A DNA stretch of 64,000 nt from Lepidodermella squamata (Eukaryota > Animalia > Gastrotricha), in assembly GCA_047495785.1 (NCBI GenBank), contig JBLDXI010000024.1, positions 3,658,001-3,722,000 on the forward strand, in the 5' to 3' direction. A model generated the notes under the pieces. The model did not search any database. It was given only the letters and a program-made list of their open reading frames with translations, and was not told where the DNA came from. Below, piece by piece: positions 1-35,783 of this stretch (position 1 is its first letter; each line of letters begins with the position of its first letter). A program made the translations under genes and the position numbers.

Positions 1-1308
1 GCACTCCGAGTGACTCTCTGAATCAGCGTTCCGGCTGTCTTTGGCTACAGTAACCACTTCGGGCTCTTTAGTGCCTTGCAGAAGCTTCAATAGCTTCGGA
101 TTTCGCGAGAATCCTTTCCTCCATCTTTCTTTTAAGGCTTTCGTACTTCGTTTTTGCAAAACAGGGTAGGCCGCTCGAATCTTTTGCCATTGGCGCCACG
201 CACCATACTTGTCAATGCCCATTTTGAGAGCGACAATTTCATCCATGGACCAAGTTCTCAATTTAACAGCTTTTCTGACGTCAGCCGGAGCAGTGCCGTT
301 GATTGAAAAACTAGAGTCTCTCAGCATAATATCCCACTGAGCACTGCACGAACCAATGCTTCGATTTTTCAAAACATCGTACGTTTCGATAATTCGCTGC
401 CAAAAGGGCCCCTTGAAGTGAGAATAGCCATCTTTAAGCGCTTGTCGCTCCTCGTCAGTCCACGACACGTTTCGAGTCTTATTGTCTACGGATGACATAT
501 TGCTGATCTCATCTTCATTAGGCAATGTTTCAGGAGAGCACTCCAAGTCACTCCCTTGGTAATTTCTTTTACAGTCATCCTTTACCGCAACCACTTCAGG
601 CTCTTCAGCGCCTTCTACAACCTTTAGCAGCTCGGAATCGCGAGAAATTATTGTCCTCCATTTGTCATATAGACTTTGAGCACTTCGATAGTGCAAAATG
701 GGATATGCCTCTCGAATCTTTTCCCACTGGCCCTGTGAACCGAACTTGTCCACGCCTTTTTTGAGAGTCACAATTTCACCCATGGACCATCTTTTGGTTT
801 TTTCGATACCAGCCGCTGCCAGGCCTTCGATTGAAACGTTAGCGTCCTTTGACATTTTTGACCATTGATCAGAGCATTGCTTCCAACTTCGATTTTTCAA
901 AACATCATACTCTTCAATGATTCGGTGCCAAAATGGCCCCTTGAAGCGAATATAGCCATCTTTTAGCGCCTGTCGTTGCTCATCAGTCCACGGCACGAGT
1001 CCCATCATAGACGCTACGGCTGATGAGTTGTCAAATTTACCATTAAGCAGGCTTTGTAGAGTTTCACTGTCAGAAATGCGTCTCCACACTGCTCTGATCT
1101 GTGAGCTATCGAGTTTTTGCAGAACAGGGTATGCAGCTTGAATTTTGGCTATTTCACGGAGTCCATACTTGTCAACGCCTTCCTTAATCGCGAGCAATTC
1201 CTCGAGTGTTCTCCTCGTTTTGCCAGTGTGGGGGGTTGATGTAGGCTTCACAGACTTCGCAGGCTCGGGCGAAACCAACGCACACGAATTCGTTAGAGCG
1301 TCATTTGT
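1..1308 (-). CDS. Myb/SANT-repeat exon with at least 5 repeats, paralogous to the last exon of the gene at 2029-3766; runs off the window edge
   Basis: Acceptor tttctgttctAG at 1309-1310, then an open frame to base 1 with repeats such as PWTDEQRQALKDGYIRFKGPFW, WSMGEIVTLKKGVDKFGSQGQWEKIREAYPILHYRSAQSLYDKWRT and PVLQKRSTKALKERWRK. Clear DNA similarity to 2240-3015. No SANTA exon of its own was found upstream. Confidence 0.75.
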
Positions 1309-2028
1309 CTAGAACAGAAATATACCAAGTGAGCAAAAATGATAGATTATTTGAATTTGCAAATGAATGAGGATGAACGTGGACAGTCGTCAAGGTCTCA
1401 GATTTTCGGATGCACCTCCGGTGAGTTTTTTTGATTACTCTTGTCGTCAATATTTAGGCTCGAGAAGCCAAGAGTTCCTGTTTTCCAAAACTCTAGGTCA
1501 AAATTAGCTCTTTCGCGCTGAACTGTATCATTGAAACCGTCTCAACGTGTTCCCGAGTGAACCTTGCGCTAATAAATCATCGCCTTTGAATAAAAAATTG
1601 AATAAAAAAATTCTTGATCTTCTAAATCTTTCTATGTTAAACGACGTTCGTTAATCAAATTTTGTGTAGAACTGATGAAATTATGTAAAAAAGAGCGAAG
1701 CATTTCCTTAATAAGCACACAACTTTTCCCCTTTTGCGTCAAATTTGTAAAAATGATTATGATGCGCCCTAACTTGACTCTTAATGAATTACTTAATGAC
1801 TTAATTCTGGACGACCCTCTCTACAGGCGGCGCTGGATCATCAAAAATCGGCGGCCTTTTCGCATTCTACGTCACGAGCATCTGACCCACCTACAAATCC
1901 TCTTACGAAGCGAGAGCCTTGTGATTGATATAATTAGAAATGTCGGATGTCGGATGTAGGATGTAGGAAGTCGAAAATGTCGGATGGAGTCCACCCAGCA
2001 AAATTTTATACACTCAACACGACGGCAT

Positions 2029-3766
2029 TTAAACAACAGGTAGTAAAACAGTTGGTTTGACTATTGTTGATTCATCAAATGACTTGGAGAAATAATCACA
2101 TCTATTAGAGAAAAGTTTCCATACCTCAGACGATTCAGGAGGTTGAAACGATGGTTCTAAAACGCTCGAGGTTCCACATTGAGGGGCCTGTTGTTGGCCA
2201 CGTTTGCGTGGCTTTTTCACTGCAATCTCAGGAGAGCACTCCGTGTCGCTTCCGGGATAAGTGTCTCCGATGTCATCAGTAACCGCGCCCATTTCAGGCT
2301 CTTCGGCGCGTTCCAATAGCTTCAATAGCTTCGGATTGCGCGATATTCCTCTTTTCCATTTTTCCTTTAGAACCTTCAAACTTCGTTTTTGCAAAATAGG
2401 ATAGGCCTCTCGAATCTGTCGCCAATGCTCCATCTCGCCAAAAATGTCGCCGCTCCCTTTGATAAAATTGTCCACACCGTTTTTGATAGCGACAAATTCA
2501 TCCATGGACCAAGTTTTCAGTCTAACAGCTTTTCTGACGTCAGCCAGGGCTAGGCCGTTTATTGAAATGTCAACGTCCTTCGACATTTTCAACCATTGCT
2601 CAGCGCACTCCTTGCTACTTCGATTTTTCAAAACATCGCACGCTTCAATGATTTGCTGCCAAAACGGCCCCTTGAAACGAGCAAAACCGTCTTTAAGCGC
2701 TTGCCGCTGCTCGTCAGTCCAGGGCTCGTATTGAGTCACATTTTTTACGAATGAAGAATTATTAAGAAGGCTTTGTAGGCCTTTGTCAATAGACATGCGT
2801 CTCCATGCACGCTGGATCTGTGAGCGATCGAGGTTTTGCAGAACAGGGTATGCCGCTTGAATTTTGGGTATTTCATCGATGCCGTACTTGTCAACGCCCT
2901 CTTTGATCGCGATAAATTCTTCGAGGGTTCTCTTCTTTCCACCAGTAGAAGGCTTCTCAGGCTGTCCTGGCTCGGGCGGGACAAACGGAAAAGAATTCGA
3001 CTGAGTGTCGTTTACCTGAAACAGAAAAATCAGTACAACGTGATGGTTTTAAAATTCCAAAAAGTATTTAGATCCAGATTTGCGATCTAACATTTTTCGA
3101 ATAGATATCACCAGAAATAAAGTTACCTCGAGGAAATCCTGCGATACCCTTTTTGGTAAAGGATTGCTTCGTATCAGCCATGGAAAGTTCGGACGGTTTT
3201 CTAACGAGCTTCCACAACTGGATGAGTCATCACTCATACTTTGTACCCTGATTATTCGAAGCCTCTTGCATCTGTCATCATGCTCGCGACTTTGAGCAGC
3301 TTCCCTCTTTTTCCGCAACCTAAGTAGCAATATTAATGTAAGTGATAATGGAATCAAAATGTCTTCAGCCTTACTCGGCTTCCTGTTCTTCGTAAGCTCT
3401 GCACGCCCTTAAAACTTCCTTTTCTAATTCGCTTTCCGTTTCTGGAGTAGGCGGGAGCTTTTCCAGTGTTTCGCGACAACGAGCCAGTTCATCTTTCACG
3501 AGATCCTGCCAGTTTTCAGGAAATCCCTTCGAAAACTGAGCGATAAACTCGGAGCTGAAGACTTTCGACATAACTGCACCATTTGACGGGCCGATTAAGT
3601 TGAGAATAGACCCGGAGCCTGTTTTGACAGAAGTCTCAGATAGCCGCTCTATAATCGGACTCGACGTAATAGCTATTCGGGTTTTCGTGTTGAGACCTGC
3701 GACTAAAATCGAGGTCATAGGGAAGTCTGGGACGAGAGACCAGTTGAGAATCGTCACAGCTGCCAT
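2029..3766 (-). CDS. Short KNL2/Mis18BP1-like protein: SANTA domain plus 3 Myb repeats (3 exons: ~3766-3375, ~3320-3127, 3015-2029)
   Basis: SANTA-like motif ILNW..SSPIIERL..VKTGSGSILNLIG..FSSEF..FSKGFPENW. Splice junctions are phase-compatible GT-AG. Three Myb repeats in the last exon. Confidence 0.8.
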
Positions 3767-4182
3767 AATCCCGGCTTTTCATAGTAAAACGCCTACATTT
3801 TTCAGATAATTCGATTTAAAAAAAGATTCTTCAGACAAGGAACAATTTTTCTCATTTTACAGCGAAAATATCTGCATTTTCCTCATCCAATCGAGTAAAA
3901 TCCTAAAAATGCTGGAAAATTCGAACAATTTGATTTTAGCGAATAAAACTAGGCCTCTTTTACTTCTGGCAATCTTGATCGAAATTGAGCAATTACGAAC
4001 AATCATCAACAATGATATAACGTAGTCATCCAGGAAATCGAATAGCCTCAATTACGGCCATTTATCCCATGAATTTCACAATGAAATAATAAGAATGCAG
4101 CATTGTAAAGGTGATAATTACGCCGAGAAAAAAATAGTACAAAACTGCTTGAAATAGTTGCGAAAAGATATTATAACAAAAA

Positions 4183-7100
4183 TTATTCATCATCGAAAGA
4201 TTCACTACTATAACCATTGGTACTTTTGTCGCCAGACAACGGGGCTCCGAGCATTTCAGCCGCGAAATCGTCGTCCTTCAGCATTCTCTCCCACATACGT
4301 CGACAAACTTTGCTAGCTCGGTGGGATAAAATGGGGAATTCTCGGCGTATCATAGCCCAATTCGCCATGCCGAATTTTTCTACGCCTTCCTTCAACGCTC
4401 GGCACTCTTCCGGCGTCCATTTTTGGTATTTCAGCGTTTTCTTCTGGTCTAATTCGTACAGGTGTGTCTTGCCCTCAGCGACAGCGAGAAATTTTAGAAG
4501 ACCATCGTTTTCGACGAGACGGCGATAAGCGGCTCGCATGGCTGAAAAGTCATGCTTAGCGAACACTTCAGGATAGGCTTTTTTAATTTTGAGCCATTGG
4601 CCTTCGCCAAACTGATCGACGCCTTCCTTCAGCTTTGAATAAGCTTCATAGCCCCAATCTTGGACTGGGACGATAACCATACCAGGTGATTGGCATGGCG
4701 CTGAAGTTTCAGGCCTGGGTGTTGCTATCGCATTTGTAGATGGTGTCTTTGACGGCGCCTAAAAACATCAGATAACAAATTGAAAAGCCGAACAAAGGTG
4801 AATTCAAAATATATTTTTCGACTTTCCCCAATTAAATAAAAATGGAAAACATGAAAAATTTAGGACAAAGCCCGGCACAATATTTTCGTGTTTTGCGATG
4901 GGGTAAATTGAAAAGAAATTCAATTTTTCAAGGAATTCGAACTATAGAAACTTAAGACTCACTTTACTCCTGCTTGAAGTCGCTTGCGGGGTTTCGCTAC
5001 TTGGAGTAGCTGCGGCTGGTCGGCTCTCGAAGCTTGCTGGCGCTTGAAAAAGGAACGAAGTGAAAGTCTTGACTAGACGAGCCCACACGTGGCTGATCAT
5101 GAGCGGCGTTCGCTCGTAAAGCAACGGATCCGATTCTCGAACTTTGTCCCACTGGCCCTCGCCAAACTGCTCGACACCCGCTTTAATCGCATCGTACTCT
5201 TCCTGCGTCCACGGCCGGAAAGATATTTTCCCGGTTAGCGGTGTTTTCGGTGCACTGGTTGGTGCCCTAAAATTGGAAGAAAATTAGATCTAGTACGAAT
5301 GAATTGGGAAGTTTGAACTCACAATGCTGGAGTTTTTGGTGTGTTAGCCGCGACACTCTTCCTTCTAATAATAAGGAAATATTCCCATAATATAGAAATT
5401 AAAAAATTGATATTTACCCTCTTTTGGCTGACGACGCATTCAAATTAGCCGGCAAAGCAGGTTGAGATGATTGTTTTTGCTTCAACTCATTGGCAACTAA
5501 CGATTTCCTAGCACTACTGGGCAGGCCAGTCTTCGATTTCTGGCGAATCATCACACGAATTTGAGAAAAATTGAAGCTAACACAAGTAAGCTCACCTTCT
5601 GATCGGGAGAATTCGACAGCTCAGTACTAGTAGAGCCTTTCCTCGCTCTTTTTCGAGACTTTGAAGCTGGAGCAACAATTTCCGTTGGTTCCAGATCAGG
5701 CGAATCGGGTATTTCAATTGTCTTAAAGAATTGCTTCATTTAATTTTATCATTTTGAACTGATCTATCTTACCTCAGGTTCTTGAACCAATCGAACAGGA
5801 GATCGACGTCGGGTCCTACGTTTCGATGATTCCACTGCAGTCGTTTCGACAGCCTCCTCTGGTACCTGTCCATGGAAATTCGAAGGCAACATTTTAGCAT
5901 TAAATCACTTTTCAAGCTCGATGATTATTACCGACTGTGGAATTTCAGGGGGTGCGGACTCTTGACGAGACTCTTCATGAAATTGCACTGAATTAGGTGC
6001 ATCCTTCGGGAAAAAGTAGAAGTCAACATTAGTAATTTTTTAGGTCTTATAGCTTACATCAGGTGCATGAGATCGGCGAGATTTTTTGCTTTTAGATTTA
6101 CGAGAAATGGTTTCATCAGTTGGTGGTTCAGAATCCGTCTAGAAGGAAAGAATGAAAATATAGGTAGGCTTTCGATTGGTTTCAACAAACCGGAACAGCT
6201 ACCACCTCGTTCGAAACAGGCGTGATTTCATTGTTAGATTCAATTACGGGGGGTTCCTAAGATTAAAAAAACCGCATTCAATGTCATCAAATTCGAATAA
6301 ACAATTGGTAAATTTTCAAGTCGGTCCCATCCAAAAAATAACGAAATATACCTCTGATGCCTGAAGAGATCGACGCGATCGACCCCGCGTCCGAACTGTA
6401 ACAGTTTCAGCCACTGCGGTCGACTCTTTTTCCTCCATCGACTTGGCCTGTCCCTGACATAAGAAAGAATTAATGAAATGAGGGAACTTCTGAAACATCA
6501 CTAACCGATTCAGTTATTGATAAAATATGTGTTTGAGGAATTTCGTCACAGTTTTCAACCTCTGCATTGCGATTTTTTGTTTTCTTGGCCCGGCTAGTTC
6601 GAGACCGGCCCCGGCGATCAGATTGAACAGTTGGTTCGCCAGTTCCAACCTCCATCGAGATTCCGTTGGATTCTGCCACATTTTGGTCGACAACCTATCG
6701 AGAAAATAATAAAAAGTAATTGCTTCGATTTAATCAAAAATAAAGCGAACCGGGTGTTCGATGACATTGGTGATTACCTCCGGCTCCTTTGTCACCAGGT
6801 CATGTGAGTCGGATGCAACATCTTCCGCCGAGTCCTCCTATTATAGCTAGATGAAAAGTCATCGCATTTAAATTTTCGATCAGTACCTTTCGAGATTTTC
6901 TCTTGCGACGCTTTTTCGAGCCCTCCGTAACCGTAGAATCTAACATTTCTGTCGATTCTTCTGCAACCTTAGTGAGAAGTAGTAAATTATATAATTTTAT
7001 AGGGATTTATATAACTGCGCTTACGACAATCGAAAATCCGGCTGATTCAGTGTCCAAAACTGATAATCGCTAATTTTTGTGAAAAATTCCGCAATGATGG

Positions 7101-10100
7101 AAAAATATATAGGTATAAAAATCAAAGACTTACCTCTGCCTCAGCTTCAGCTTCATCGGGATGTTCCTGATTTACTAAAGTGCTACATTCCTCCGAGTAG
7201 TTCTTGGCTCGGCGATTTCGAGACCTCCTCCTACGATCAGATTTGGCAGTTGTTTCGCTAGGTATCTCCATCGAAGGTTCGTTGGATTCCGCCAGATTTT
7301 GGTCGACAGTCTGTAGAAAAACAATAAACCCTGAATGCTTCAAATAAATCAAAAACAAAGCAAACTGGATATTCGATGTCATCAGAAATTGTTTTCCGCT
7401 CATTTCTCACCAAATCCTGTGGGTCGGATAAAACGTTTTCCGCTGGTTCCTGTTGTTAAAAAGTTGAAATTAAAATAAACCTCACGTAAGTTTTCAGGTA
7501 GTTACATTTTGATATTTCCTCTTCCGACGCTTTTTGGAGCTTTCAGCCACGGTAGAATCCGAAGTTTCTGACGGACGGTCCGCAGCCTGAGTGAAAGTCA
7601 ATGAAAATAAATAGGTTCATTCGTAACATGTAACTAAGCTTACGGCAATCGAAAATCTGTCAGGTTCTGAGTCCACAGCTGATACTGGCTAATTTTAGAT
7701 TAAAATTCCGAAATGAAGGAAAAATAATATAAAAATCGAAGACTTACCTCTGCCTCAGGAATTTCCTGGTTCAGTAGATAACCAGATTCCTCAATGGTCT
7801 TAGACCCCTTTTTACGATCAGATTTAGCAGTTGTTTCGCTAGGGCCTATTTCCATCGAAGCTTCCTTCGATTCCGTTAGATTCTGGTCTACAGACTATAG
7901 GAAAAAAACAATAAAAGTTTATTGCTATATTAATCAAAAATAAAGCAAACAGGATGTTCGATGACTGTTTCCGCCTCATTTCCCACCAAATCAAGCAAGT
8001 CAGATGCAACATGATCGGCCAGTTCCTGCTGTTAAAGGCATGATAATAATTCTATTAACGTAGATTTTCAGGTAGTTACATTCTGATGTTTCGTCTTCCG
8101 CCGCTTTTTCGAGCCTTCAGCCACGGTAGAATCAACCATTTCTGGCGGTAGATCCGCATCCTGAGTGAAAATTGGGGAAATGGAATAGGTTTATTCGTAA
8201 TATTGTAACCAAGCTTACAGCAGTCGAAAATTCGGTGTCTATTGCTGGCTAAAAACCAAAAAATTACAGAATAAAGGGACATTTAAAAAATCAGGGACAT
8301 ACCGCTGTCACAGTTTCGTCAGAATTTTCATGGCTCATTACAGGGCCGGATTCCTCAACAGTCAATTCGCACTGGATATCTTCGGCGCAAATATCGGAAA
8401 CCTCATTCTCAACTGCTTTATCGGTTGTCTGAGGAGATTCTTCTGGAACTGTGAGCGCAGGCACGGGCTCGCATGATCCAACAGTTTCGGGCAATTCCTA
8501 TTGAATTGATTTTTTCCAAGTTTTTCGAACAAGAACTAATAGGTTTCATACCGTTTCAATTATAGTTTCGAATTGTTGAGGATCTGTCTGTTCAAGTTCG
8601 TCAAGTTCAGAGGTTTCCTTTGCATCAACATCGGCAGGGGCAGATTTCTTGGCTCTTCTCGAGCGAGATCGCGAAGAAGCTCGGTCTTTTTTCGAGACTT
8701 GCTGCTCGATATTTGATAATAGCATTTCGCCCTCAGGCTAGAATTTTTTAATTATTTTCAAATTGTAAGATAAATAATATATGGTATTGATATTTACCTC
8801 TTCCACTATTCCGACGTTACAAACAGGAACGACTTCATTCGGCCGACTTTCTTCCGCATCCTTTGATAGTAGATTTACCGCGTCCTGTAAAAATAGCCCC
8901 ATCGAATCCTATCCAACCTTAAAAAGAATTCAACTCACCTTTTGAGATATTCTACTAGCATTCGAAGTAGATCGGTCACGGGTTCGAATTTGGGGTTCAG
9001 CTGTGGTTTGAACTTGATTTGTGTTTTCGGCTTGCATTTCGCTTTGAGAAGGTTCGGTTTGAAAAGTGCTAGGCTCGAGTATCGACCCTGGCTCTGTTTC
9101 GGGCGGCCTATCCTCGGTTGTACCAGTCGGTTCTGCAGGCTGTTCATTGGACCCCACGGGATCAGGTGGTTTTTGCGAATCCTAAAAAATAACATTAAAT
9201 TACAAAAATAGAAAAAAACACATTTATTAGCATTCCATCGCTGAGAAATCTTAAGCTTAAAAAAAACAGATTTTTCCGATTATAGATGATAATTACGAGT
9301 CATACCTTGGTCGGGCGTAATTTTGAACGTTTTACCAAATGTTTTCTTTTAGCCTTTGATTTCTCCGAGTGATCTAAAACATCTGGTTCCATAGATGAAT
9401 GATCCTGAATCTATCGAATAGATACATAGAAAAAATAACAGGAAATTAAAGCCAAAATACCTCATCGTGGTTGTCCTCGATTTGACTATTATTCACGTCC
9501 TCTTCATCGTCTTTCTCATTAGCCTTGATCTTAAACAGTTTCAAATTTAGCAAAAATATAAAATTAATAAAATTTGTAATTACATTCAAAGCCGATTTCT
9601 TGAATTTAGACTTGCGCCGGGTGGCCGGAGGAGAGCCATCAGCGCTAAAATTCTTGTTGAATGAAGAGGAAGGGTTCAAAAGTGACGCTACAAACTGTTC
9701 GTCAGGCTTTCTAATGCGAACAACTGGTATCATGCCCAATTTCCGCAACATGGAGTTATGAGACACCTGAAAAAATCACATATTACTCCGTCATTTCCGG
9801 AAAATTTAGTGGTTCGAACCGCAATTTCGGGACTGGCAAAAGGTTCGGTTGATTTTGTGTCCAAAGGTGATGAATCAGCTTTGTGTAACGTAAGGAAAAA
9901 CCCAACAGCCGGCGAGCCCGTTTTTATTACTGGCGAAGATTTCTCTGCAACGGGCGATTCTTCGTTACAAACGGCAATCATGCCCATTTTCGACAATGAG
10001 ATTGAGGCAGGTGCTTGCTGCTCAACTTCGCCCATTTCCTCATTACCCATCCCGTCCTGGTCATTTTGATTGGGTGAGTTCGAGCTTGAATGAGCCCCAC

Positions 10101-13063
10101 TGTCTTCAACTCGGAAAGAGTTGATTGACACCCTTTCATCTGAATTCGAAACCTAAAAAAGAAATCGATAATCGGATGAAATTATAGTAAATTATTCACG
10201 AACAATAATTACCGCTTGAGAGGAAAATTCAGGGACATTACTGCTTTCTTCGGACAAATAAAGCGGTTCGTCGTTCGAAATAGCTGATGATATTCTCGAG
10301 TCGTTAATAAAGGCTGAGCTAACTTCGAACGAGCCTTTGTCGAAGCTTTTAAATCGCTTGCCTAGTTGTTTTTGAGGCGATTTATGGCTCGAAAAGTCGT
10401 TATCAGACTGAAAAGGGAGAGAGGTGATGATATTTAGTCTTGAAAATCTGGCCTACCTTTGCTCTTCGGTTGAGTTTTTTCAAGGCCAGTAAAGTATCGC
10501 GGTCGTCATCGAAGTTCAATTCAGGAATTTTTCTCGCATCAGCATTCAGATCTTCAACTAGCTTTCCGAGGATTTCCATCTCAAAAGCAACATCTGGAGA
10601 ATTTTCTGAGCTGTCTGTGCTATCGGTTTCGCGAACCTATAAATTTTTAAGAATTCTTCCTCATATCTAAATGTCGTAAAATCCGCGCCCAACCTGGTTT
10701 GATTGCTGCGTGAAAGCTGATTCGGCCATGGAGGGTGACTCATCCTCGCTATCAGACATCAGCAAATCAGACAAAGTGCGCAATGTACGAGCGGATGATT
10801 CCGCTTCGTGCAAACTTTTCGCCGGCGCTTTCTCCTCGTTCAGTGAGTTTTTAACAGGCTTTGACATCGCAAAATAATGATTTTATTAATTCTTCCTGAA
10901 AATATTTTATCAATTACCTCAACGGGTAAATCCGACAGTTCAACACTTGAGCGTCTCTCATACGTCTTGGCTGGCTTTTTACAGCTTGGAAGCTATAAAA
11001 TGGGAAAATTCGGACTATGATTAAAGTGTGGTTTGCCTCCAAATTACCGGTAGATTGCGCTGCGGCTCAGGAGGCGTGCGAGGTCTCAAGATCGATTCAG
11101 CAAGTTTTTTGAAAGATACATCAACCAGGTGAATATAAGCGGGCTTAAAAAGTGAGTCGCAGGATTCGGTTGATTGTGAATTGCTCGGTCCAGATTGATG
11201 AATGTTCCGTCTGTTGTTTGATTTCGATTCAACTGATGAAATCTTTGAGGAAGGGTTCGCACTCCAGTCATTTTTTGGAGTCCAATTTTGGCTTTTTTTT
11301 GTTTCTTCTGAAATAGGAGATTTAGCGCGATTTTGGCCATTTTCAGCCGAAGAGCTGCTCGTGTCCAAAACAGCCGAGTCCGATTTTTCAGTCGATGATG
11401 TTTTATCTGCCTTCGATTTAATACGAGTCGGGTTTTGAGAGCTTGATACGGGACGATCTTCCCTCGCTTTGACATTTTCGACTGGACGAATAGGTTGCTT
11501 ATCGATAACCTCATCTTCTTGGATCGGAGATTCAGCTCTAGTTTCTATTTGAGAACTCTCAGATTCCGTCGTTTTATCTTGAAAAAGATGGTTAACACCA
11601 GGCAATCTCATCACGCCTCTGCGTGGCGGGCCCTTCCGGGCACTTTCTTGATGCTCGTGACTGATAACGTCACATGCAATTGACTCCGCGTTGTCTTTGA
11701 TGTCTTTTTTCTCCGATGAAGTTTGTCCTTCAAATTCCTGATTGACCTCCTGGCTGCTATCGTCTGCGTTTTCCTCAACGCAGGAAGACTGTGGAATCTC
11801 AGTTTCGAGATTGATATTGTCAGAAGCAACCGACTCCATGCGATCTTCTGATGATTTTTTCTTATCCAATACCTGGATGAAACCAGGGTTGTCTTCTCCT
11901 TTCTCAACGCTAGCAGACTGTGACACCTCGATTTCAGCGGGATTATTTGACGCAAGCTCCGGTACGATGAGAATTTCATCATTTTGCTCGATCATTACTT
12001 GGTCAACGGCGACCTCCATAGGGCAGCTAAGAAATAAAGCAATAATTACTTATAATAGAACCGCAGTCCTCAGGAATAATTTACGATTCTGCCTCGGGTA
12101 TAACATCGTCTCCGCCCGTCAAGTTGGTATGAGGCGCTGAAACAGGAGATTCGTCAGAGGAATCATCGGACGACAGTGTCTGAGAAATGGACAATGGGAA
12201 CATAGCACTAGTACTAGTAAACTGTTTACCTGGTATGTTCGCCTTCGAGACGTCAGCCCAGCAGGCTTCTCTGAGGAAGATTTGGATGAAAGCTTTTCAA
12301 GGGTTTGTAAAACAGGACCGAGAACACTAGCCCGACGTTTTGCGAGATCATTGTCTGATGACGACTCGGCACTTTTACATGAAACTTTAATCTGAGATTT
12401 GCTTTTTCTACTCGTCTGTTTCGGCGATTTTTCATCAGCTTTTTTACTTGACTTCACCCTGTTGTCAAACATTTTCAGTTATTTTCAGTCAATTTTTTTA
12501 CGATAAATCTTACCGCCTCTGTTTGGGAGAAGCCGGATCCGACGAACGCATGGAAGAGGTCCGATGTGGGCTGATCTGCGTGGTATGATCAAGCAATGTT
12601 TCAGATCTGAAAGATAATGGAATAAGGCATTGGCGTGCCTTGCGTGCAGCTCAAACCTTGAAATATTAGTTGAAGTACTTCTAGGTGGCAACGAATCGCT
12701 GCTATTCGAGGTGGCTGACTGTTTAAAGGAGATTGCTAAAGATTCGTCGATTTGATTGTTTCCGGACTCTCTCAACCTAGCAAGCTCTTCCTTGACGAGA
12801 CTATGCCAGTTTTCAGGAAACCCAGTCTTGAATTTTTGAACGAATTCTTCGCTGAAAGCCTTCCGCATCTCTTCCAATCGGGGAGGTCCAACAAGATGAA
12901 CTGAGGCACCGGACCTTGTCTCAACATAAAAGTTGCTTGATCGATCAACGATAGGACTTGTTCTAACCAACACCCTGGTTTTGGCGTTGAGCCCGCATAT
13001 GATAACAAAAATACAGCTCTCATCCGGCTGCAGACGCCAGTTGAGAATCTCTGCGGTAACCAT
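4183..13063 (-). CDS. knl-2: Long KNL2/Mis18BP1-like protein: N-terminal SANTA, very long low-complexity S/E/K/R/T/P middle encoded by many small exons, 3 C-terminal Myb repeats
   Basis: SANTA-like ILNW..TSPIVDR..VETRSGASVHLVG..FSEEF..FKTGFPENW (12770-13063). Myb repeats PWTQEEYDAIKAGVEQFGEGQW (~5070-5220), WGYEAYSKLKEGVDQFGEGQW and KWTPEECRALKEGVEKFGMANW (4270-4660). Continuous chain of same-strand GT-AG exons between them; not every junction was verified. Confidence 0.7.
6640..8260 (-). repeat. About 3 tandem copies (period ~600 bp) of a multi-exon/intron module inside the long KNL2-like gene
   Basis: Marker aatcaaaaa(t/c)aaagc at ~6732, 7348 and 7932; marker ca(a/g)tcgaaaat at ~7027, 7646 and 8221; ccacggtagaatc recurs at ~7547 and 8121, with a variant near 6930. 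Confidence 0.8.
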
Positions 13064-13894
13064 TGAAATCAAAGCGAAACTGGATACAAATCTAAATGGA
13101 AGAGAGTAACAAGTGCAATCGTGTAACGAGAGCGGTTCCGCGAAAAAATGTGAGTTTTAGTCGAGATGTTTTGACCTCTGAGTCCTTTATCTCAATAGAA
13201 AGAATAAATTAATGCAACAGGTTTGCTACAGTCGCGGATCGTGGTCCATGATCAATGATTATCGATCTTCGCCGAGTTGGGACATCAAGAAAAAGCGAAA
13301 CTCTTAAGGGAAGATAAGGAGCATGCAAATTTTAGGCTTTGCCGCCATCAAAGTAGTCAAGGTCAGACATGTAATTTAATAATTCTTTGAAAATTAATAT
13401 AAAATTGTAATTTACACAAAAATCTGAATTTTTATTTTAAAAAACTGAGTAAATGAGCGGCGGAAATTCTGCATCTTCAGGTTCATTTTCACTCAGCGAC
13501 CAGTGGCTTCGCTCTTTCTTTCTCCAATCTCCAATAGCTCAGCCTTAGGGTATGGTGTTCCTAAGGGGAAGCAGGGGAATCAAGGGACGGCCGAACATAG
13601 AAAGCTTCTCTCGTCCTTGGAACGAGATAATTGAGTCTTGGACTTGCTGTGTCATTTCTGATACCACAACAGCAACGTTTTGATATCCTTTAATTAATTA
13701 TAGGTTCACACGGGTATACACGGGTCACAGCTCTGAAACAACAGATAAATCCAGTTTTCAATTTTTCATTACATTCTTCAGATTTCCGTTCACATTTAAG
13801 ACAACAAGTTTATTGACGAAAGCAATATAAAGGATAGTAAGACGACAGATCATTTCTCAAGGCGCAATTCAGCCAACTTCGCGGGTGACATTCT

Positions 13895-16800
13895 TCAGTG
13901 TCGACGCCTGCGATGCTTTTTTTCGGTTTCCTCATATTCATCTGATTCGTAGTATCGAACTTTGGATCTGTTTATTCCACTGTCTCTTGAGTGTCTGCGG
14001 CTTTTCGGTTTGGAAACAGCTTTCTGCTCGATAGCATCTCGAATTTTGTGAGATTTTCTCTTATGACGATGACTGGAGGGGTCAGTGCCCACAGCTGACG
14101 AATAAGATTTAAGATAATCAGTTGACGTGGAATTGCGAACGGCTCGCTTTTCAGAAATGTGGTGGTGATGGCGGTGCGAAGTATGATGCCGAGTCGTAGC
14201 ACCAGAGTGAATCGGATGGTCTTCGCGATGCCGGCCGTAAACAATTTCTACAATATTAACGCTGTCGAGAGGGTTATCGTCAGAAAACCTCTGCGAGCGA
14301 TGATTTGTCCGAGGTTCCTTATGCAAAGGTATACGTTGATTGCGAATAGCAGTTGATGCTATTCTTCGTTTGCTTTGCTCCTCCGCTCGAAGCCGTTTTC
14401 GAGCCGGATCTACCGTGCATCTACCAGCAAAGGGCACTTCATCGGGTGACTCATCGTCATATTCACTTATTGGAGAAAAACGAGCGATTCCGTTTTCTAA
14501 ATTATCGGTATCACCCTGGTCTTTCACACTGATGTCCTCATCGAAAGTGCTGTCACACTGAAATGCGAGGTTGGTCACGGCGAAATTCGTCTCGACAGCT
14601 AACACATTGCCCCGTGAAGCCACGGTGTTGTTATTCGCGGCGTTATTTTCATAAGGCTCAGGAGATGGGTTATCTTGGCTCTCCTCGTGATCTAACCTGT
14701 TGGCCAAGTAGACGACGTTTTTCGTAATTCCAATGTCAGCACGTTCCAGGACTTGACGAGGTTGAGTCGTTATTATTGGCTTCTTCTCAACCTTTACTGC
14801 CTTTGGAATTTCTTTCTGAAAAATAAATTCAGCTCAACTATTTAGCCGTCTTGCTAACCACTCACCAATGGCTTTTCGTCAACTTCTTCCTCAAGAAGTT
14901 CCTCGGCACTCAATGGCCCGAAAAAGCTGAGAAAGACGGGCAAAAATAAGCAAGAATGGAGAGCACTGATAGCAACTGCGAGCGACAGAGACCGGAAATA
15001 GACTTCGTAGATGTACAGCCCAGTTGTTGACATGGCCAAAACTGACATCACTGTCCCAGCCCTGAAAATGCGATCAGTTAAAATGCGATTTTTTGGTGGT
15101 AAATAAAACATACCCAGCGGGAATCAAGGCGTGCCCAACGTCTGTCAGCGCATGAATGACTTTATCTTGTCGAGTTTTGCCCTCTGCCATCATGAAGTCG
15201 AAGGAAAGATGCATGATGAAATCAACGACGTACCCAACGTTGATCTAAAAGAGAATATGTGTCCAGGGCACAAACTTCATAACGAGCACTTACGATGAGC
15301 ATGGTTAAAGATACTAGATCCAAGTCAACGCCGATGTAAGGCAAAAGGCCGACGAGACCGGCCACCTCCGACAGCAAAACGGCGATAATCCAGAAGATGA
15401 GCACCAAATTCGGGACAAAAAATATAGCAACAAAGCCAGCTGACATGACAGTAATCAGGATGTAGTAACATGAGATGTAAATTGTGTTCCGTTTCATTTC
15501 ATAGTCGCCGAAATCCGGGTGATAAATCAGCAAGTTGTATTTCGCGTATTGCTTCTCGAGTTTGTTGGCAAATTCGTAGCTGGCTATTTGTCGGCTCGAT
15601 TCTGTCAAATCTAACGCTATGACATGACCTTGAGATTTGCAGACTAAGGCTCGGTCTCGCTCGCACGATTTCACGTCGTCATTTACCAACCATTGCCTAT
15701 CGTTTTCACGAGCATATCCGTCATGCAGCATGTCCCAGAACAGGTAAGAATCATTCATAGCCAAGTGGTACAGCGTGTCGTTCCTTTCGAGATAGTTCAG
15801 ATAATCACGCAACCACCAGCGCGTCATCTTCGGAGATGGATGAAAGAATCCACTGTGTTCTATTTTGCGGTAAATCGTCTCAATATCGTGCTGAACAGAT
15901 GGATCGCGGTAATTTATAGTTGAATAAAATATCACTTTGACCTCTCGATAATTATTGAAAGCTTCACGATTGACTTTCAAGAACTTAGCCTCCGGGCTAG
16001 CAAACGGGGCGAGGTTTTCCATCTTCATTCCAAAGCTCACGGATGACAATCCGTAAACAACAAGAGCGACGTAGCCAAAGTAAAGCAATAGGGCTGCGTA
16101 TTTGGCCGGGGATGTAATAAGGAACTTGGCATAACTATGCACGAATCGAAGTAAAGCTGATGCAGCGGGTCCTTCGGAATCTTCGTCATAGTCTTCATCG
16201 TCAGCATGAAGCTGCTTCTCTTCCAAAGCTACGCGCTTCTTCTTCTCAAAGTCAGTTCTTGAACAGCAGATGATGAAACATGCGCTTCGTTTAACATAAA
16301 CTATAACCAAAGTTTAAAACAAAATATGTATATGGTTATTCGAAAAAACATACGCCTTCTTTTCCTCTTTGGCATAACGCAGCAACAGCACGCATTACGA
16401 CCAGCCGGCTCAAGCATTGCTAGTAAAGCTAGCGAAGGGCAGAAGATTGTTAATTGCAGAATGAAGTCGAATACCATGCAAACGAGACTGTAAGTTGAGA
16501 ACAGAGATATTATTTTGTAGGGAGTTCGAGATCCGACAGATTGAGCCACCAAGTTCGTTACAAATGTAATGAAAATCGCAGAACCAGCCTCTGACATTGT
16601 TTGCTTCATTCTAATGGGAATAGGATCCAAAGGCTTCGTGTGGTGGAGTCCTGTTACTAGTGCGAACATATCGTCCAGGCCGATTGCCAGGGTTAAGAAT
16701 GGGACGCCAGCACAGGCGTAATTAAATTCGTAACCTAAATAAGCCATAAAACCAATTCCAGCCGCATTAGCTAGCAATGTTGAGGTAACTCCAATGAGAC

Positions 16801-18633
16801 CGAGCCATGGTTTCGAAAGAACAGAGTCGCTCCCTGACATCGCTACGACGGCCCAGATTGCCACAGCCACGATCGTTGCCAGAAATTTTGGAATTAAACT
16901 AGAAGGAAATAATTGTTAATCAGAGAACAAAAAAAGGAAACCGGAAACCATTATTTACTTGAATAAAGCTTGCTCAGGGTATTTGGTCAATTTCTCCGCG
17001 AATTGCCACCGCACTCCGATTCCAAGCTTGGGCTCAAAATAACGCTTATTCTCCTTATCGAGCCAATTGTTGATTGCTGTGTCCCAAGAGCGATAAGCGG
17101 CATTTGCCTCCGTAGTATCGGCATGGCAGATCACCCAACCCTCGCGTATCGCCTTAATAGAACTCGCATAAACCACATCTTCCGGACCAACAAATGTTTG
17201 AACATCCCCGACAACGTCAGACATAATCTTATTGTTCCCGATGTAAGGAAACGGCAAAGCATGGACTAGTAAGCTTCCTCGAAAACCCTGCGTATCCATT
17301 GATCGAAGCCGAAATGAAGCGCATGGGCTGCTCGGGTTGGAGTTGTCGTGCCTAAAAACGAGATTTCGAATTTTGATCTAGTCAACAAAGGAACTTATCT
17401 TGCCTTGCGCATAGTTGCTCAAACGTAAAACCGGGATACTTCGGCGTCGACATATTACTCCAAAGTAAGCTTTCAATTTTGAGTAGCTTCTGAAAGCGGT
17501 CCAAATCGACAAATCCGTGTTTATAGGTGTGGTTTGTTATAGTAAAAACTGAAGAAAATCAGTTAACAATTTGGAAGGGCGAATATTGATAAAAACCTAC
17601 TCAAATTAAGGTCATGACAGCGACATCCCTTATCTCTATTATTTTTGTGAGCACATGAGAAAGCATTGACACCAGGCTTTTCATCAGGTATCGATCGTTC
17701 GCTTCGAGATTTGACTGTTGGAATTTGAGATTCGGTCTTAAAATGCATTGAAGTGGTTTGCTTCGGAGTGGTTGTGGTTGGCGGCCTTTCCCCCTCGCAG
17801 CTACAGCCATAAAGCCTGAAGCCGCTGTTCTAAATTCAAACAAAAAGTTGAAACTGAAGTTGAGTTGAATTTCCATTTACCATTTCACGATCATTTGCGA
17901 TGGGGGAAGATGGGTCATTAAAATCTGTATCTCGAACCGGGGTTAGATTAATGTATCGTAGGCCCGAGGCGCATCCAAGGCCTAATGACAGCCCGAGAAT
18001 TAGCATGATGTAAGGAAACCTTCCGATAAAGAGACCATACATTCCAAGGCACCATGCGATTGCTGACTGAACTGAGGCAGAAAGCTTAGAAAGGGTTAAT
18101 TCTTTGAAGTATTTAACAGTAGCCACGCGGGCTGTTTGAAGCATTAATCGCAGTTTCGCTTTAAACCTTGTTTGGTTATCTTCAACGGCGATTGAGCGGG
18201 CATCGTCGATAAAAATATGGGAGGATTCGTGAGTTATTGCTACCACATTCATTTCACCGGGCCTATTGTAAGCTACTGATGGCGCGCTCACCCGGTTCTT
18301 TATCATTGGCGGAGGAGGAGGCGGTGGGGGTTTCAGCATCATTCTTCGCCGAGTTGCGCGAATAAATCTGTTTGGAATGAAGTCGTGGTGTGAATTGAGT
18401 TGTTCTCCGTACGTGACCTTAGCGGCATCCTTTTCGCCGCCTTCTACGAAACAATAGGACGAACTCGGATCGGCGCACTGATAGACGCTACTGGTAGGAT
18501 TGTTTCTGCTGCTACTGCCGCTACTTCCAGGAAGCAGACCATTCAGCCCATTTTCGTTATTAGAACATCCAGGATCATAGTGCGGAATATCCGGCAATTG
18601 GTAATATGTTGACGCCATGGCCTGGTCGCCCAT
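13895..18633 (-). CDS. Patched-related (PTR/PTCHD) RND-family sterol-sensing protein with long N- and C-terminal tails
   Basis: SSD motifs SKPWLG, PFLTLAIGLDDMF and SEAGSAIFIT. Second half contains WWLRDY, GVDLDLVS, INVGYVVDFIMH and HSCLFLPVFL. Most splice junctions checked are in frame, and the last exon joins ORF 13895-14707. Confidence 0.88.
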
Positions 18634-19228
18634 GACGCAACGATAAGTTTTATTATCTGCAATACTTTTCAAACCCTGTCTCAAATGTAAAAAATTGAAT
18701 TTGCAACAATCCTATAGGGAAAAAGTGGATTGGTTTAAGTGGTATAATTAGAAATTTGGAAAAAGTGGATGATGGGATTAGGCCATGCTAGTGGAGAGGA
18801 ATCTGTTTTTTCGCCGTAGCATTACCTCTTTGTGTCAAAGGCTTTTGTTTAACAAGCGCGGTATTTCGTCTACGCGCAATGCATGTATGTATGTACGTAT
18901 GTGTGCATGCGCAATGAAAATGAAAAGTTTAAAATAATAAAGGCAACGATATTATCTTACCATTTCTCTCGCTGTCTTTTCTCTATCGCAAACGCGTCGG
19001 CCCATGTTGCCATCTCGCGCTTTATGAATAGGACATATATTATCATCATAGCCAACACTGAGGCTGCGGTTTTTGCTTGTTGCAACAAGTCGCGCGAAAC
19101 GGATTTAACAACAACAACGTCGCAGGACGAATGAAAAAGAACCGTGTTTTATTTACCGACACATACACTTTTTAAAAAAACAATGAGAAACAATTATGAG
19201 AAACGACGCCATGGTCCACAATTTCGCC

Positions 19229-20762
19229 TTATAACATGGGAGCACTCGCCAGAGTATTTTTGAAATCCGTGAATAATTGCGAGTTGAATTCAACCTCAGG
19301 AAAAAACTGCGGGAAGGTCCTTAGCAACATATTGTACATCTGCGATGAACTGCGGAAAAAAGCCATCAAGCTATAAATCTGAGACAAGCGCCCTTCTGCC
19401 CGGCCCGGGTGATTGATCCGAACATAATTTAAGAGAGCACTCTCACAATCATTTCTTATTCGAAAAACAGTTTCCCGCTGCTCCAGATTGGGGATTTCTG
19501 AAATTTAAACACGTGAGTGAAGGCTTTGATTATCAAATTGAAACTCAATACCTGAATTGAGACACAGAAGAGAGCAGAAAATAGCGTATTCCCTTTCGTC
19601 AAGGCCTGATCCGATCAGCTGATTGCCAGCGTTGACCATGTAAAATTCAACGTTACAAAAAAATGGAGCAAAATTTCGCACGACCTCCATTGTTTCGCCC
19701 GGCTGAAAGGACATGATATTCGCTTGCTGGGTTATAACGTTGAAATCTAGCGATAATTGGGCGATAGATACTGGAAAAAACGCTTGCGTAAACAAGGTGA
19801 CGCGATCTTGAAGGGTCATTTGATTGGCAGAGGGCAGAGCATTCAAAAATTTACTAACCGCCCTCATATAGACTTCAAAGGCTTTCACGCGTAATTCCAT
19901 GATATCTTGAGGCGTCATGCTGGTGTTGTATGCAATTCTCACATCGTTGATCATCCTTAAATGTTGGGCGGCTGTGGTTATCATGTCAACGATATCGTAT
20001 GGTCTTGATGCATTTGCTTCAGGTATAACCTGGGGCGAAGTAGTTGGCACGGTCTGTTCCAAAGCGGTTGCTTTCCGTCTCCTCATCAGGGCGATTGTTC
20101 CTATTCTCCGATCCAGCGAAACTCGCCCTTTTGATATGTTGCCAGCGGACATTCCAGCTTCGAAACACCGCTTAAGGCGGCACTTTCGACAGTTAGAAGC
20201 TTTTGGACACAACTTCTCGCCGTTTTCCTGCAAACTCTTGCATAAATACTGCATTTTGTGCTTATTTTTGATTGAGCGGCGGAAAAAGCTTTTACAACCT
20301 TCACAAGTGATAGCCCCAAAATGGAAGCCATTACCTGAATCCAAAAATGAGATGATGACAGGCGAAAAAAGTGTGTTTCAACTTGCTTGAAGTGTTATCG
20401 CAGATTGAACAAGGAATGATAGAGAAGTCAACCGTTGAATTGGAACTGCTGCTATCTTTTGGGCTGAATGCTGAGAAAGCTGACGATGATGGACTTGCAG
20501 AACTCTCCGACATATTCCCAAAGGGCAGCAGTGAAATTTTCTCGTAGATCACCGACTTGCACAGTTTAAAGCGACAAACTCTGCATTTCTTCTGCTGATT
20601 TTCATCTGAGCAGGAGCAGACTTCTTCCTGCTTAATTCTATCCTTGTACCTGTGGTAGAACTTCTTGCATGCAAGACAAAGTAAGAGGGGAGGGCTGCTT
20701 GACTTTGCCTGATTAACCAAATGGCCGCATACTTTGCAATTGCCAGAAGCAATTTCGCTCAT
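19229..20762 (-). CDS. Nuclear receptor with two tandem DNA-binding domains and a ligand-binding domain (exons 20762-20387, 20334-19552, 19497-19229)
   Basis: DBD1: CKVC..CLACKKFYHR..CSC..CRVCRFKLC. DBD2: CSIC..GFHFGAITCEGCKSFFRR..CRKCRLKRCFEAGM. LBD: FLNALP..MTLQDRVTLF, LDEREYAIF..L.LNS, then ALLNYV..HP..R. Confidence 0.85.
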
Positions 20763-33098: not shown

Positions 33099-33772
33099 AT
33101 ATCAGCCACCTGTCTGGTCAACGATTTTATTGAACTCAAATTTTTAATGAACTGGTCACATTGTTGAAAGAATTGCCTCTCGAATGTAGAATCCTACTTT
33201 TTTAGCATACCTATATGCCTGGCGGTTCAGGTTATAATATTCACAACAATAAACTACGGCACAATTTTGTAATGTTTGATTTTGAATTTTTCAATTTTTG
33301 CTGAGTTGAAGAACGATGGGCATGACGATTGGCATAAAAAGCAGAAAATTAAGAGTCCATTAGTCACCCTGAGTCGATTGACAATAGGAGCCTTTCGGAC
33401 AATACGTGTGGTGGGAGATTATTCTAGAAGCTGGTAACAGTACTAGCTTAAAAAATTCGTGTGGCTGAATGTTTTTCTGAAAGCTACCCAAACAAGTCGT
33501 GACGTCAATGCGGGGTCTCTTGCCGCGCATGTAACGCCGCAGTGGTTTCGGCGTTTAATCGTGAAAATAACAGCGTAACAACCTGGAAAATTACCTGCAA
33601 CACGTGATGTCTGATGTGTTTTTCTGACTTCAGGTAAACAGGTTTCAATGCCAAATCGGCCGTGGATTCGGCTATAAAATGGAGCCGAAATTTGGTCAGA
33701 AAAGCATCAGATTCAAACCTTGAAAACAATTCAATTCTTACTACAACTCTACACAACCTCGCATCTTCAACC

Positions 33773-34108
33773 ATGCATTCATCAAAGCTGTTCATTCTAG
33801 CCGTTGGTGCCGTGCTTCTCGTCGAGCTGGTCCTGTCAAAGCCTCTAAGAAAAGGAGACTCGAGCCACTCATCCGAGGAGAGAAATTCGACCCAGATTGC
33901 TGCAAGAGGAAGATCAGGGCCGAACAGCCAATCCGTCGCCAGAGGCGCCAGTGGCGGATCAAACCGGCCGAAACGAGCTGCCGGCGACAATGGCGCCAAG
34001 AAGCGAGGCAACAGTGGAGCAACCGTGGCGACGAATAAAAAGGGCGTCAGCGGTGCAGTTGAAGCCGTCACTACAGCTCGTCCTAGGGGCCACCATAACC
34101 ATCAATAA
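33773..34108 (+). CDS. Secreted 111-aa G/S/A/R/K-rich, Cys-free peptide precursor, copy 1
   Basis: TATAAAA at 33673, signal peptide, AATAAA at and after the stop; frame conserved with copy 2. Confidence 0.8.
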   Translation: MHSSKLFILAVGAVLLVELVLSKPLRKGDSSHSSEERNSTQIAARGRSGPNSQSVARGASGGSNRPKRAAGDNGAKKRGNSGATVATNKKGVSGAVEAVTTARPRGHHNHQ

Positions 34109-35631: not shown

Positions 35632-35783
35632 TTTAATTGCTCGGAAACAAAGTGATAATAAACAACAGTGAAGAAGAGATGAAACTTCAAAGAGAGAGTT
35701 GATAATCGATTTCAAATTTGCTTGTTCAGGCTTTGCAGATATACAAAAACTTGCTGAAGTTGGCGCGGGATATAAAGCGGAAA

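What the first reader, a model, noticed from the sequence alone, without database searches (positions are those of the whole stretch)
1..13063. KNL2/Mis18BP1 cluster in which the centromere-licensing SANTA domain is joined to arrays of TRF/telobox-like Myb repeats
Seen: two SANTA genes in tandem, each ending in three Myb repeats, plus a further exon with at least five. Many repeats read GV(D/E)(K/Q)FG(E)GQW..I...YP, and some end in LKEKWKR, LKERWRK or LYDKWRT. Established: KNL2/M18BP1 licenses CENP-A loading and normally has at most one SANT/Myb domain, while GVxKyGxGxW..LKD(K/R)WR is the signature of telomere-repeat-binding TRF-type Myb domains. In the short gene one repeat type (GPFW..RS..EC) looks more like the usual M18BP1 SANT, so repeat types alternate. 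Inference: this could be a sequence-reading centromere-specification system that targets CENP-A loading to telomere-like or satellite repeats, diversified by duplication, or a SANTA domain recruited to telomeres.
Basis: partly seen in the sequence, partly recalled or inferred. Interest (0 to 1): 0.85.

Follow-up and report, generated by a model that had tools for sequence, protein, structure and literature searches.

The report
SANTA genes fused to Myb arrays
Two neighbouring genes of a small invertebrate join the domain that marks the centromere-licensing factor M18BP1/KNL2 to strings of 3 and at least 8 Myb DNA-binding repeats, some closest to telomere-binding TRF proteins. This build is not described for the family and suggests, without proving, that these proteins are anchored to specific repeated DNA.

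Summary
Both N-terminal ORFs score as SANTA (Pfam E 5e-12 and 1e-15). The window holds exactly 11 Myb repeats, all at 88-5220 on the minus strand.

The correction: spliced RNA contigs join the "short" gene's SANTA exon to its Myb exon, then splice that exon (GT..AG, in frame, 2125|1308) to the "further exon". So this is one gene with 8 repeats in the window, and it continues off the window.

There are three repeat types, in the order A-B-C, A-B-C, B-C:
- Type C matches only telomere Myb chains in the PDB (zebrafish Terfa 7e-9, TRF2, TRF1, plant TBP1). It keeps an L-K-(D/E)-(K/R)-W-(K/R) telobox.
- Type B resembles the usual M18BP1 SANT.
- Type A is a degenerate form of C.

Eighteen other SANTA proteins carry 0-1 Myb. 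One metagenomic relative has a SANTA gene with at least 5 Myb repeats, alongside a canonical M18BP1. The window genes may therefore be a paralogous subfamily rather than the M18BP1 orthologue.

No test here shows centromere or telomere targeting or DNA specificity. This is a new variant of a known kind, of moderate to high interest. A neighbouring-window note (s1-379691) flagged the continuation of the same array.

The parts
4183..13063 (-). Long gene L: SANTA at the N-terminus, a long low-complexity middle, and three Myb repeats at the C-terminus (about 1700-2100 aa).
   Evidence: ATG at 13063, stop at 4183. The last six introns are RNA-supported. A splice-path search finds an open GT..AG path from 13063 to 4183 and recovers all six RNA introns. 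The part from 5932 to 13063 is ab initio only.
12764..13063 (-). SANTA domain of L
   Evidence: PF09133 E 4.9e-12. 42% identical to the SANTA of L001.
5053..5220 (-). Myb repeat L1 (TRF2-like, acidic, pI 5.2), in exon 5266-4963
   Evidence: Best PDB match is TRF2, 2.3e-7. Exon borders come from RNA joints. pI.
4495..4665 (-). Myb repeat L2 (GVDQFGEGQW type; the third Trp is replaced by Tyr)
   Evidence: HMM E 3.8e-24. Lies in the last exon, 4758-4183.
4264..4428 (-). Myb repeat L3 (generic Myb, basic, pI 9.9)
   Evidence: PDB matches: SNAPC4 1.2e-9, c-Myb 2.4e-9, TRF2 1.1e-8. Pfam Myb_DNA-binding 8e-10.
3375..3766 (-). Gene S exon 1: start codon and SANTA domain
   Evidence: PF09133 E 1.4e-15. 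PDB 9r6h_A (M18BP1) 1.4e-4. Intron 3374-3320 comes from an RNA joint.
3127..3319 (-). Gene S exon 2: charged, probably helical linker
   Evidence: RNA joints on both sides (3374-3320 and 3126-3016). The frame is kept.
2125..3015 (-). Gene S exon 3: module 1, with repeats A1 (2937-2773), B1 (2730-2566) and C1 (2517-2323)
   Evidence: HMM E 1e-24 to 1e-26. RNA contigs cover it.
1309..2124 (-). 816-nt intron of gene S. If retained, translation stops at 2029-2031 (524-aa form).
   Evidence: RNA joint 2125|1308 with gt..ag. RNA depth is zero over 1401-2000.
1..1308 (-). Gene S exon 4: A2 (1215-1054), B2 (996-835), C2 (795-625), B3 (468-307), C3 (258-88). The frame is still open at position 1.
   Evidence: Pfam Myb 2.2e-20. 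DNA and RNA contigs show a further diverged copy of about 537 nt just beyond the window start.

Best explanation
Shown: the region holds two tandem, co-oriented, transcribed paralogues of the SANTA-domain (M18BP1/KNL2) family.
- In both, the single C-terminal SANT typical of the family is replaced by an array of Myb repeats.
- Gene L (13063-4183) has SANTA, a long disordered middle and three repeats.
- Gene S (3766 to beyond position 1) has SANTA, a short charged linker and at least 8 repeats, probably 10 or more.
- The S repeats come in three types: A is a degenerate TRF-like repeat, B is M18BP1-SANT-like, and C is basic and TRF/telobox-class.
- The S array grew by duplication of a three-repeat exon and then of a B-C pair of about 537 nt. 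The copies have been kept under purifying selection.

Inferred mechanism:
- The SANTA domain docks the protein on the centromere/CCAN machinery, or on a SANTA partner, as it does in vertebrate and plant KNL2.
- The Myb array, above all the basic type C repeats with their conserved N-terminal basic arm and K-(D/E)-(K/R)-W-(K/R) helix 3, binds double-stranded DNA at many points.
- Affinity would then depend on tandemly repeated target sites, either TTAGGG-like or satellite.
- L and S may work together, as the plant alpha/beta KNL2 pair does.

The DNA that is bound, and whether the output is CENP-A loading, are not known.
For: - SANTA: Pfam E 5e-12 and 1e-15; the only PDB match is M18BP1.
- RNA contigs carry 11 GT..AG joints that are absent from the DNA run. 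They join SANTA to linker to Myb exon to the further exon.
- There are eleven Myb repeats and none elsewhere in the 64 kb.
- For type C, all 15-20 PDB matches are telomere Myb proteins. In the predicted fold, a repeat superposes on zebrafish TRF2 at 45% identity and rmsd 1.9 A, and on hTRF1 at rmsd 1.2 A. pI is 9.6-11.1.
- Type B against the M18BP1 SANT profile gives E 3.9e-5.
- dN/dS between modules is 0.39-0.44 at dS 0.66-0.81.
- An independent SANTA gene with at least 5 Myb repeats lies on metagenome contigs L001-L003.
- Interacting KNL2 paralogue pairs are known in plants (PMC13294675).
Against: - No functional data exist.
- The L gene model between 5932 and 13063 is ab initio.
- The 2125|1308 joint rests on one contig with a 27-nt side.
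- No canonical M18BP1 SANT, Knl-2-like domain or CENP-C-like motif is present.
- A probable canonical M18BP1 exists in the relative (L004), so these genes may have left the CENP-A pathway.
- In humans the SANT domain contributes little to localisation (PMC12953894).
- The telobox contact residues vary between copies.
Confidence: 0.55

Rival explanations
1. Telomere or subtelomere protein. One or both genes are paralogues that took on a new role. They bind TTAGGG tracts through the TRF-class repeats and use SANTA only as a protein-interaction module, with no role in CENP-A loading.
For: - Type C and L1 match telomere Myb domains best.
- Earlier notes report TTAGGG telomeres in this genome (not tested here).
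- The relative seems to keep a separate canonical M18BP1 (L004).
- SANTA also occurs in a non-M18BP1 protein (P0054).
Against: - No TRFH domain is present.
- The base-contacting Asp is Glu in two of three C repeats and the Lys is Tyr in the third.
- Arrays with linkers of 60-120 aa are unlike any known telomere duplex binder.
- No telomeric repeats lie nearby.
Confidence: 0.2
2. Ordinary M18BP1-type licensing factors with extra SANT-like modules. The repeats bind histones, other proteins or DNA without sequence preference, and add valency rather than sequence reading.
For: - Types A and B and repeat L1 are near neutral or acidic.
- Type B resembles the M18BP1 SANT.
- M18BP1 and plant KNL2 bind DNA non-specifically and act through multivalency (PMC12953894; PMC13294675).
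Against: - Type C keeps the basic N-terminal arm, the telobox and a high pI, which are the hallmarks of base-reading TRF Myb domains.
- Three distinct repeat types have been kept apart over dS of about 0.7.
Confidence: 0.2
3. Decaying duplicate or transposon-derived Myb array with no cellular function.
For: - A neighbouring-window note calls the locus TE-rich.
- Transposons with Myb/SANT-like second genes are noted in this genome.
Against: - The frame is open over at least 928 codons across four exons, with canonical splicing and RNA coverage.
- dN/dS is about 0.4.
- Between-strain differences in 2359-2646 are 6 synonymous to 4 non-synonymous.
Confidence: 0.04

Closest known systems
M18BP1 / KNL2 (Mis18-binding protein 1; C. 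elegans KNL-2; plant alpha/beta KNL2)
   Same: - SANTA domain (PF09133), with the only PDB hit being M18BP1.
- A long disordered body.
- Myb/SANT-class domain(s) toward the C-terminus.
- Paralogue pairs exist in plants.
- Type B repeats resemble the family's SANT.
   Different: - 3 and at least 8 Myb repeats, against 0-1 in the 18 family members scanned.
- Most repeats are TRF/Myb-class, not the canonical SANT.
- SANTA sits at the very N-terminus.
- No CENP-C-like motif and no Knl-2-like domain hit.
TRF1/TRF2/Terfa and plant TBP1/TRP telomere-repeat-binding Myb domains (telobox)
   Same: - Type C and L1 have these as their best, and for type C their only, PDB matches.
- 36-45% identity, rmsd 1.2-1.9 A.
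- GVxKyGxGxW, a basic N-terminal arm, and LK(D/E)(K/R)W(K/R) in helix 3.
- Type C has an extra C-terminal helix, as in the plant Myb extension.
   Different: - No TRFH dimerisation domain.
- Many repeats per chain rather than one.
- Asp is replaced by Glu, or Lys by Tyr, at base-contacting positions.
- Fused to SANTA.
Multi-repeat Myb DNA binders (c-Myb R1R2R3, SNAPC4, Trichomonas Myb2/3)
   Same: - Several Myb repeats in one chain.
- The whole three-repeat model matches these best (1h88_C, 3zqc, 3osf).
- L3 matches SNAPC4 and c-Myb.
   Different: - The repeats here are separated by disordered linkers of 20-120 aa rather than packed head to tail.
- The repeat types differ.
- The number of repeats is far larger.
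SANTA gene with at least 5 Myb repeats on ENA metagenome contigs L001-L003 (unnamed eukaryote)
   Same: - N-terminal SANTA, 42% identical to L.
- Short introns of about 55 nt.
- Repeats of the KxGVxxFG..W..I...YP kind.
   Different: - The repeats are more scattered and more degenerate.
- No A-B-C module.
- Gene model is ab initio only.

Membership tests
M18BP1/KNL2 | SANTA domain (PF09133) | tested here: met
   E 4.9e-12 (L) and 1.4e-15 (S), both above the gathering score. PDB 9r6h_A (M18BP1) E 1.4e-4.
M18BP1/KNL2 | Single C-terminal SANT/Myb of the family's own type (animal members) | tested here: not met
   A profile of four orthologue SANT domains finds L004 at 1.7e-11 but only 3-6 bits on type B in the window. 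hhalign gives B 3.9e-5, C 0.17 and L1-L3 0.01-0.4. No PF21506 Knl-2-like hit. The repeat number is 3 and at least 8, not 1.
M18BP1/KNL2 | CENP-C-like (CENPC-k) motif (chicken, frog and plant alpha KNL2; not universal) | tested here: not met
   A pattern search of all three minus-strand frames of 1-13200 and of both gene models found none.
M18BP1/KNL2 | Binds Mis18 alpha/beta or CENP-C and is required for CENP-A deposition | not testable with these tools
   The binding regions are not conserved in sequence. This needs experiments.
M18BP1/KNL2 | Orthology: SANTA groups with M18BP1 of related phyla | tested here: inconclusive
   Among 55 hits at E <= 1e-3, the best named ones are mollusc mis18-binding protein 1-like. 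In the tree S, L, L001 and L004 form one lineage-specific group (SH-aLRT 87), unresolved inside and with weak deeper nodes.
TRF/telobox Myb | Three-helix Myb with a telobox in helix 3 (LKD(K/R)WR(T/N)) and a basic N-terminal arm | tested here: met
   Met by type C only. The copies read LKEKWKR, LYDKWRT and LKERWRK, preceded by K/R-x-W. The profile matches Terfa at 7e-9 and TRF2 at 1e-5. Rmsd is 1.2-1.9 A. Types A and B and repeats L2 and L3 lack the telobox.
TRF/telobox Myb | TRFH dimerisation domain (TRF1/2 proper) | tested here: not met
   No Pfam hit other than SANTA and Myb in any exon scanned.
TRF/telobox Myb | Sequence-specific binding of the telomeric duplex repeat | not testable with these tools
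   Needs EMSA or SELEX. The contact residues are only partly conserved.

The most novel reading that the evidence does not exclude
This animal lineage has a dedicated pair of M18BP1 paralogues in which the CENP-A-licensing SANTA module is wired to a many-repeat array of TRF-class Myb domains. The array would read a tandem DNA repeat, either TTAGGG-like or a centromeric satellite. Centromere or neocentromere position would then be partly specified by DNA sequence, with array length and helix-3 variation tuning the target, much as zinc-finger arrays do.
Probability: 0.15. Interest if true: 0.85.

Novelty: new variant of a known kind. Interest (0 to 1): 0.6.

Why it matters
Animal centromeres are held to be specified epigenetically, and the role of the single SANT/Myb domain of M18BP1/KNL2 is unclear. 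It is dispensable for localisation in human cells (PMC12953894).

A natural SANTA protein carrying 3 to 10 or more Myb repeats, some of the sequence-reading telomere class, is a ready-made test case. It could show whether a licensing-factor relative can be anchored by DNA sequence. It also raises the question of how a TRF-type domain was recruited into this family.

The A-B-C module also gives a clean example of exon-level and sub-exon-level repeat expansion under selection.

Tried and rejected
- The search for homologous proteins with the 436-aa Myb frame, and with the L001 Myb region, found nothing at E <= 1e-3. This is uninformative, because the search is limited by shared words and by length.
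- Exact look-ups of three window ORFs in public assemblies found nothing, so the sequence beyond the window start could not be fetched.
- I planned to walk along the 75-kb contig of the relative from IFT70 toward an orthologous cluster. I gave this up because only IFT70 and IFT122 are syntenic and nothing upstream matches.
- L004, L005 and L006 (other SANTA loci) carry no TRF-like repeats.
- The first strict splice-path search failed. A looser one succeeded but over-includes intron-like text in the middle of L, so I give no exact protein for L.
- No telomeric or satellite repeats lie in the window. Rfam finds only a tRNA.
- The atlas search of the array returned only generic Myb clusters scoring below 0.85.
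- Hypervariable recognition helices (neighbouring note): among the three C copies, 6 of 16 helix-3 columns are invariant against 16 of 32 in helices 1-2. There are too few copies to call a difference.
- Findings searches by sequence were blank.
Full report
WHAT IS THERE

Everything lies on the minus strand. Two ORFs score as SANTA: 13072-12485 (PF09133, E 4.9e-12) and 3766-3371 (E 1.4e-15). They are 48% identical. The only significant solved-structure match of the second is a Mis18-binding protein 1 chain, 9r6h_A, E 1.4e-4. A profile built from the repeats finds exactly 11 Myb repeats in all six frames of the 64-kb window (E 1e-23 to 1e-28). All lie between 88 and 5220, and nothing else scores better than E about 1.

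GENE STRUCTURE

Of the two public runs that hold the stretch, X2 covers it evenly and without joints, so it is DNA. X1 lacks a set of short segments bounded by CT..AC on the plus strand, which reads GT..AG on the minus strand, so it is RNA-derived.

The joints give these introns:
- 3374-3320
- 3126-3016
- 4962-4759
- 5322-5267
- 5417-5365
- 5595-5540
- 5772-5722
- 5931-5866

.

One further joint was reported as 1310 to 2128 with one letter between the two sides. It resolves to a canonical intron, with gt at 2124-2123 and ag at 1310-1309. It joins ..PPESSE to TNDALT.. in frame.

RNA depth is zero over 1401-2000. The depths of the flanking bins are what coverage of 2125-2200 and 1201-1308 alone would give.

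The "short" gene S therefore has four exons: 3766-3375 (SANTA), 3319-3127 (charged linker), 3015-2125 (three Myb repeats) and 1308-1 (five more). That is 928 codons, still open at the window edge. The stop at 2029 lies in the intron.

Both runs also contain a diverged copy of the unit of about 537 nt immediately beyond position 1. So at least one more B-C pair follows. This agrees with a neighbouring-window note on Myb arrays (s1-379691).

For the long gene L, RNA supports the last seven exons. A splice-path search finds an open GT..AG path from the ATG at 13063 to the stop at 4183. It recovers all six RNA-supported introns unaided, but it clearly over-includes some intron text in the middle. 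I take L as one gene with about 75-80% confidence.

The 3' UTR of L ends near 3903, roughly 140 nt from the start codon of S.

THE REPEATS

Alignment shows three types in S, in the order A-B-C, A-B-C, B-C.

Type C:
- It is basic (pI 9.6-11.1).
- As a profile it matches only telomere Myb chains in the PDB: zebrafish Terfa 7e-9, TRF2 1e-5, TRF1 4e-3. As a single sequence it also matches plant TBP1 and TRP.
- It keeps the basic arm before the first Trp, the GVxKFGxGxW motif, and helix 3 reading LKEKWKR, LYDKWRT or LKERWRK.
- In an AlphaFold model of A2-B2-C2, each repeat is a three-helix bundle and the linkers are disordered (mean pLDDT 76).
- A single repeat of the model superposes on zebrafish TRF2 (45% identity, rmsd 1.9 A), hTRF1 (rmsd 1.2 A) and hTRF2 (rmsd 1.4 A).

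Type B (WTDEQRQALKDG..FKGPFW..RS..C):
- It is near neutral.
- It is the type closest to a profile of four M18BP1 SANT domains: hhalign E 3.9e-5 and probability 71%, against 0.17 for type C and 0.01-0.4 for L1-L3.
- The resemblance is weak. An HMM of the canonical SANT gives it only 3-6 bits.

Type A lacks the first Trp and the GxGxW motif. Its only matches are weak ones (E 0.35-0.6), all to TRF2 or Terfa.

In L:
- L1 is TRF2-like (2.3e-7) but acidic.
- L2 has Tyr in place of the third Trp.
- L3 is a generic basic Myb (SNAPC4, c-Myb and TRF2, all around 1e-9 to 1e-8).

By my own recollection of the TRF1/TRF2-DNA structures, the helix-3 Lys, Asp and second Arg contact bases. Here these positions read K/Y/K, E/D/E and K/R/R in the three C copies. 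The scaffold is TRF-class, but TTAGGG specificity cannot be inferred.

HISTORY AND SELECTION

Exon 3 and the first 780 nt of exon 4 are homologous end to end (70% nt, 57% aa). Within exon 4 the B-C pair is repeated with a period of about 537 nt. Between modules dS is 0.66-0.81 and dN/dS is 0.39-0.44. These are old duplicates kept under purifying selection. Between the RNA strain and the window, the stretch 2359-2646 differs at six synonymous and four non-synonymous sites.

RELATIVES

A full HMMER pass over 1.84 billion representative proteins with the S SANTA exon gave only 55 hits at E <= 1e-3, the best at 33% identity. Named hits are mollusc mis18-binding protein 1-like (Haliotis, Mactra) and a mayfly protein. 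Eighteen of these proteins scanned against Pfam have no Myb or one weak Myb. One is a SANTA-Chromo-PreSET-SET protein, so SANTA alone does not define M18BP1.

The best hit, P0001, is a SANTA ORF on eukaryotic metagenome contigs (L001-L003). It is followed by a 1400-codon frame with five clear Myb repeats of the same kind and several degenerate ones. An open splice path with short introns, one of them 53 nt, joins the two. Its SANTA is closer to L (42%) than to S (33%).

The second hit, L004, is a canonical M18BP1: SANTA plus one SANT that scores 1.7e-11 with the canonical profile.

L001-L004 share samples and G+C (39-40%) with contigs L007-L009. Those contigs encode an IFT70 that is 91% identical to the window's. 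The next-best IFT70 hits are molluscs at 65%. The simplest reading is one related, unsequenced spiralian-like animal that has both a canonical M18BP1 and a SANTA+multi-Myb gene. That L001-L004 come from one organism is an inference.

In a SANTA tree, S, L, L001 and L004 form one lineage-specific group (SH-aLRT 87), unresolved inside.

INTERPRETATION

Shown:
- There are two transcribed, tandem SANTA genes with Myb arrays.
- S is one long gene.
- There are three conserved repeat types, of which C is TRF/telobox-class and B is M18BP1-SANT-like.
- The architecture recurs in a relative and is absent from the other SANTA proteins sampled.

Inferred:
- SANTA provides the link to centromere proteins, as in vertebrates and plants.
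- The array provides multivalent DNA anchoring, favouring tandemly repeated targets.

Unknown:
- Which DNA is bound.
- Whether CENP-A loading is the output.
- Whether this genome also has a canonical M18BP1.

Earlier notes of this scan report TTAGGG telomeres, centromere-like satellites and further SANTA genes in this genome. I did not test them.

The literature searched describes only single SANT/Myb domains in this family. It mentions no SANTA-telobox fusion.

VERDICT

The gene model is corrected. The TRF-likeness and the alternation of types are supported. The functional reading is open. This is a new variant of a known kind.

Noticed in passing
window 5540-8725, minus strand (middle of gene L): About eight exon-sized segments repeat a strongly basic motif, followed by an acidic stretch. 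The basic motifs include SDRRGRSRTSRAKK, SDRRRRSRNRRAK, KKDRASSRSRSRRAKK, RRTRRRS and KSRKRARK. They could be NLS-like or non-specific DNA-binding patches.
   Followed up: partly
L004:2736-5246 (ENA metagenome contig, sample ERZ23486764): A canonical M18BP1: SANTA plus one canonical SANT (E 1.7e-11). It comes from the same samples and has the same G+C as the SANTA+multi-Myb gene on L001-L003. This suggests the two architectures coexist in one relative.
   Followed up: partly
P0054 (551 aa, representative library): SANTA is fused to Chromo, Pre-SET and SET domains, giving a SUV39-like methyltransferase. SANTA is therefore not exclusive to M18BP1.
   Followed up: no
window 47748-52475 and L007-L009: A single-exon IFT70/TTC30 lies next to IFT122. 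The pair is conserved, at 73% nt and 91% aa for IFT70, in a metagenomic relative, but nothing upstream is syntenic.
   Followed up: partly
window 43089-43302: A 36-bp tandem repeat (5.9 copies, 94% matches) inside ORF 42632-43384 encodes repeated GTGLRIPxPPLA units.
   Followed up: no
window 2359-2646: The RNA run differs from the window at 10 sites in 288 nt (6 synonymous, 4 non-synonymous), while the DNA run is identical. Two of the non-synonymous changes (N374K, N378K) move repeat C1 toward the type C consensus (IKKGVDKF).
   Followed up: partly
window 15222-20344 and 28872-35790: Other genes in the window:
- patched-related protein fragments (15222-16870)
- a nuclear-receptor DNA-binding/ligand-binding ORF (19505-20344)
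- an RBR/IBR-type E3 ORF (28872-30023)
- a small heat-shock (alpha-crystallin-like) ORF (35002-35790)
- a tRNA at 50688-50761
   Followed up: no
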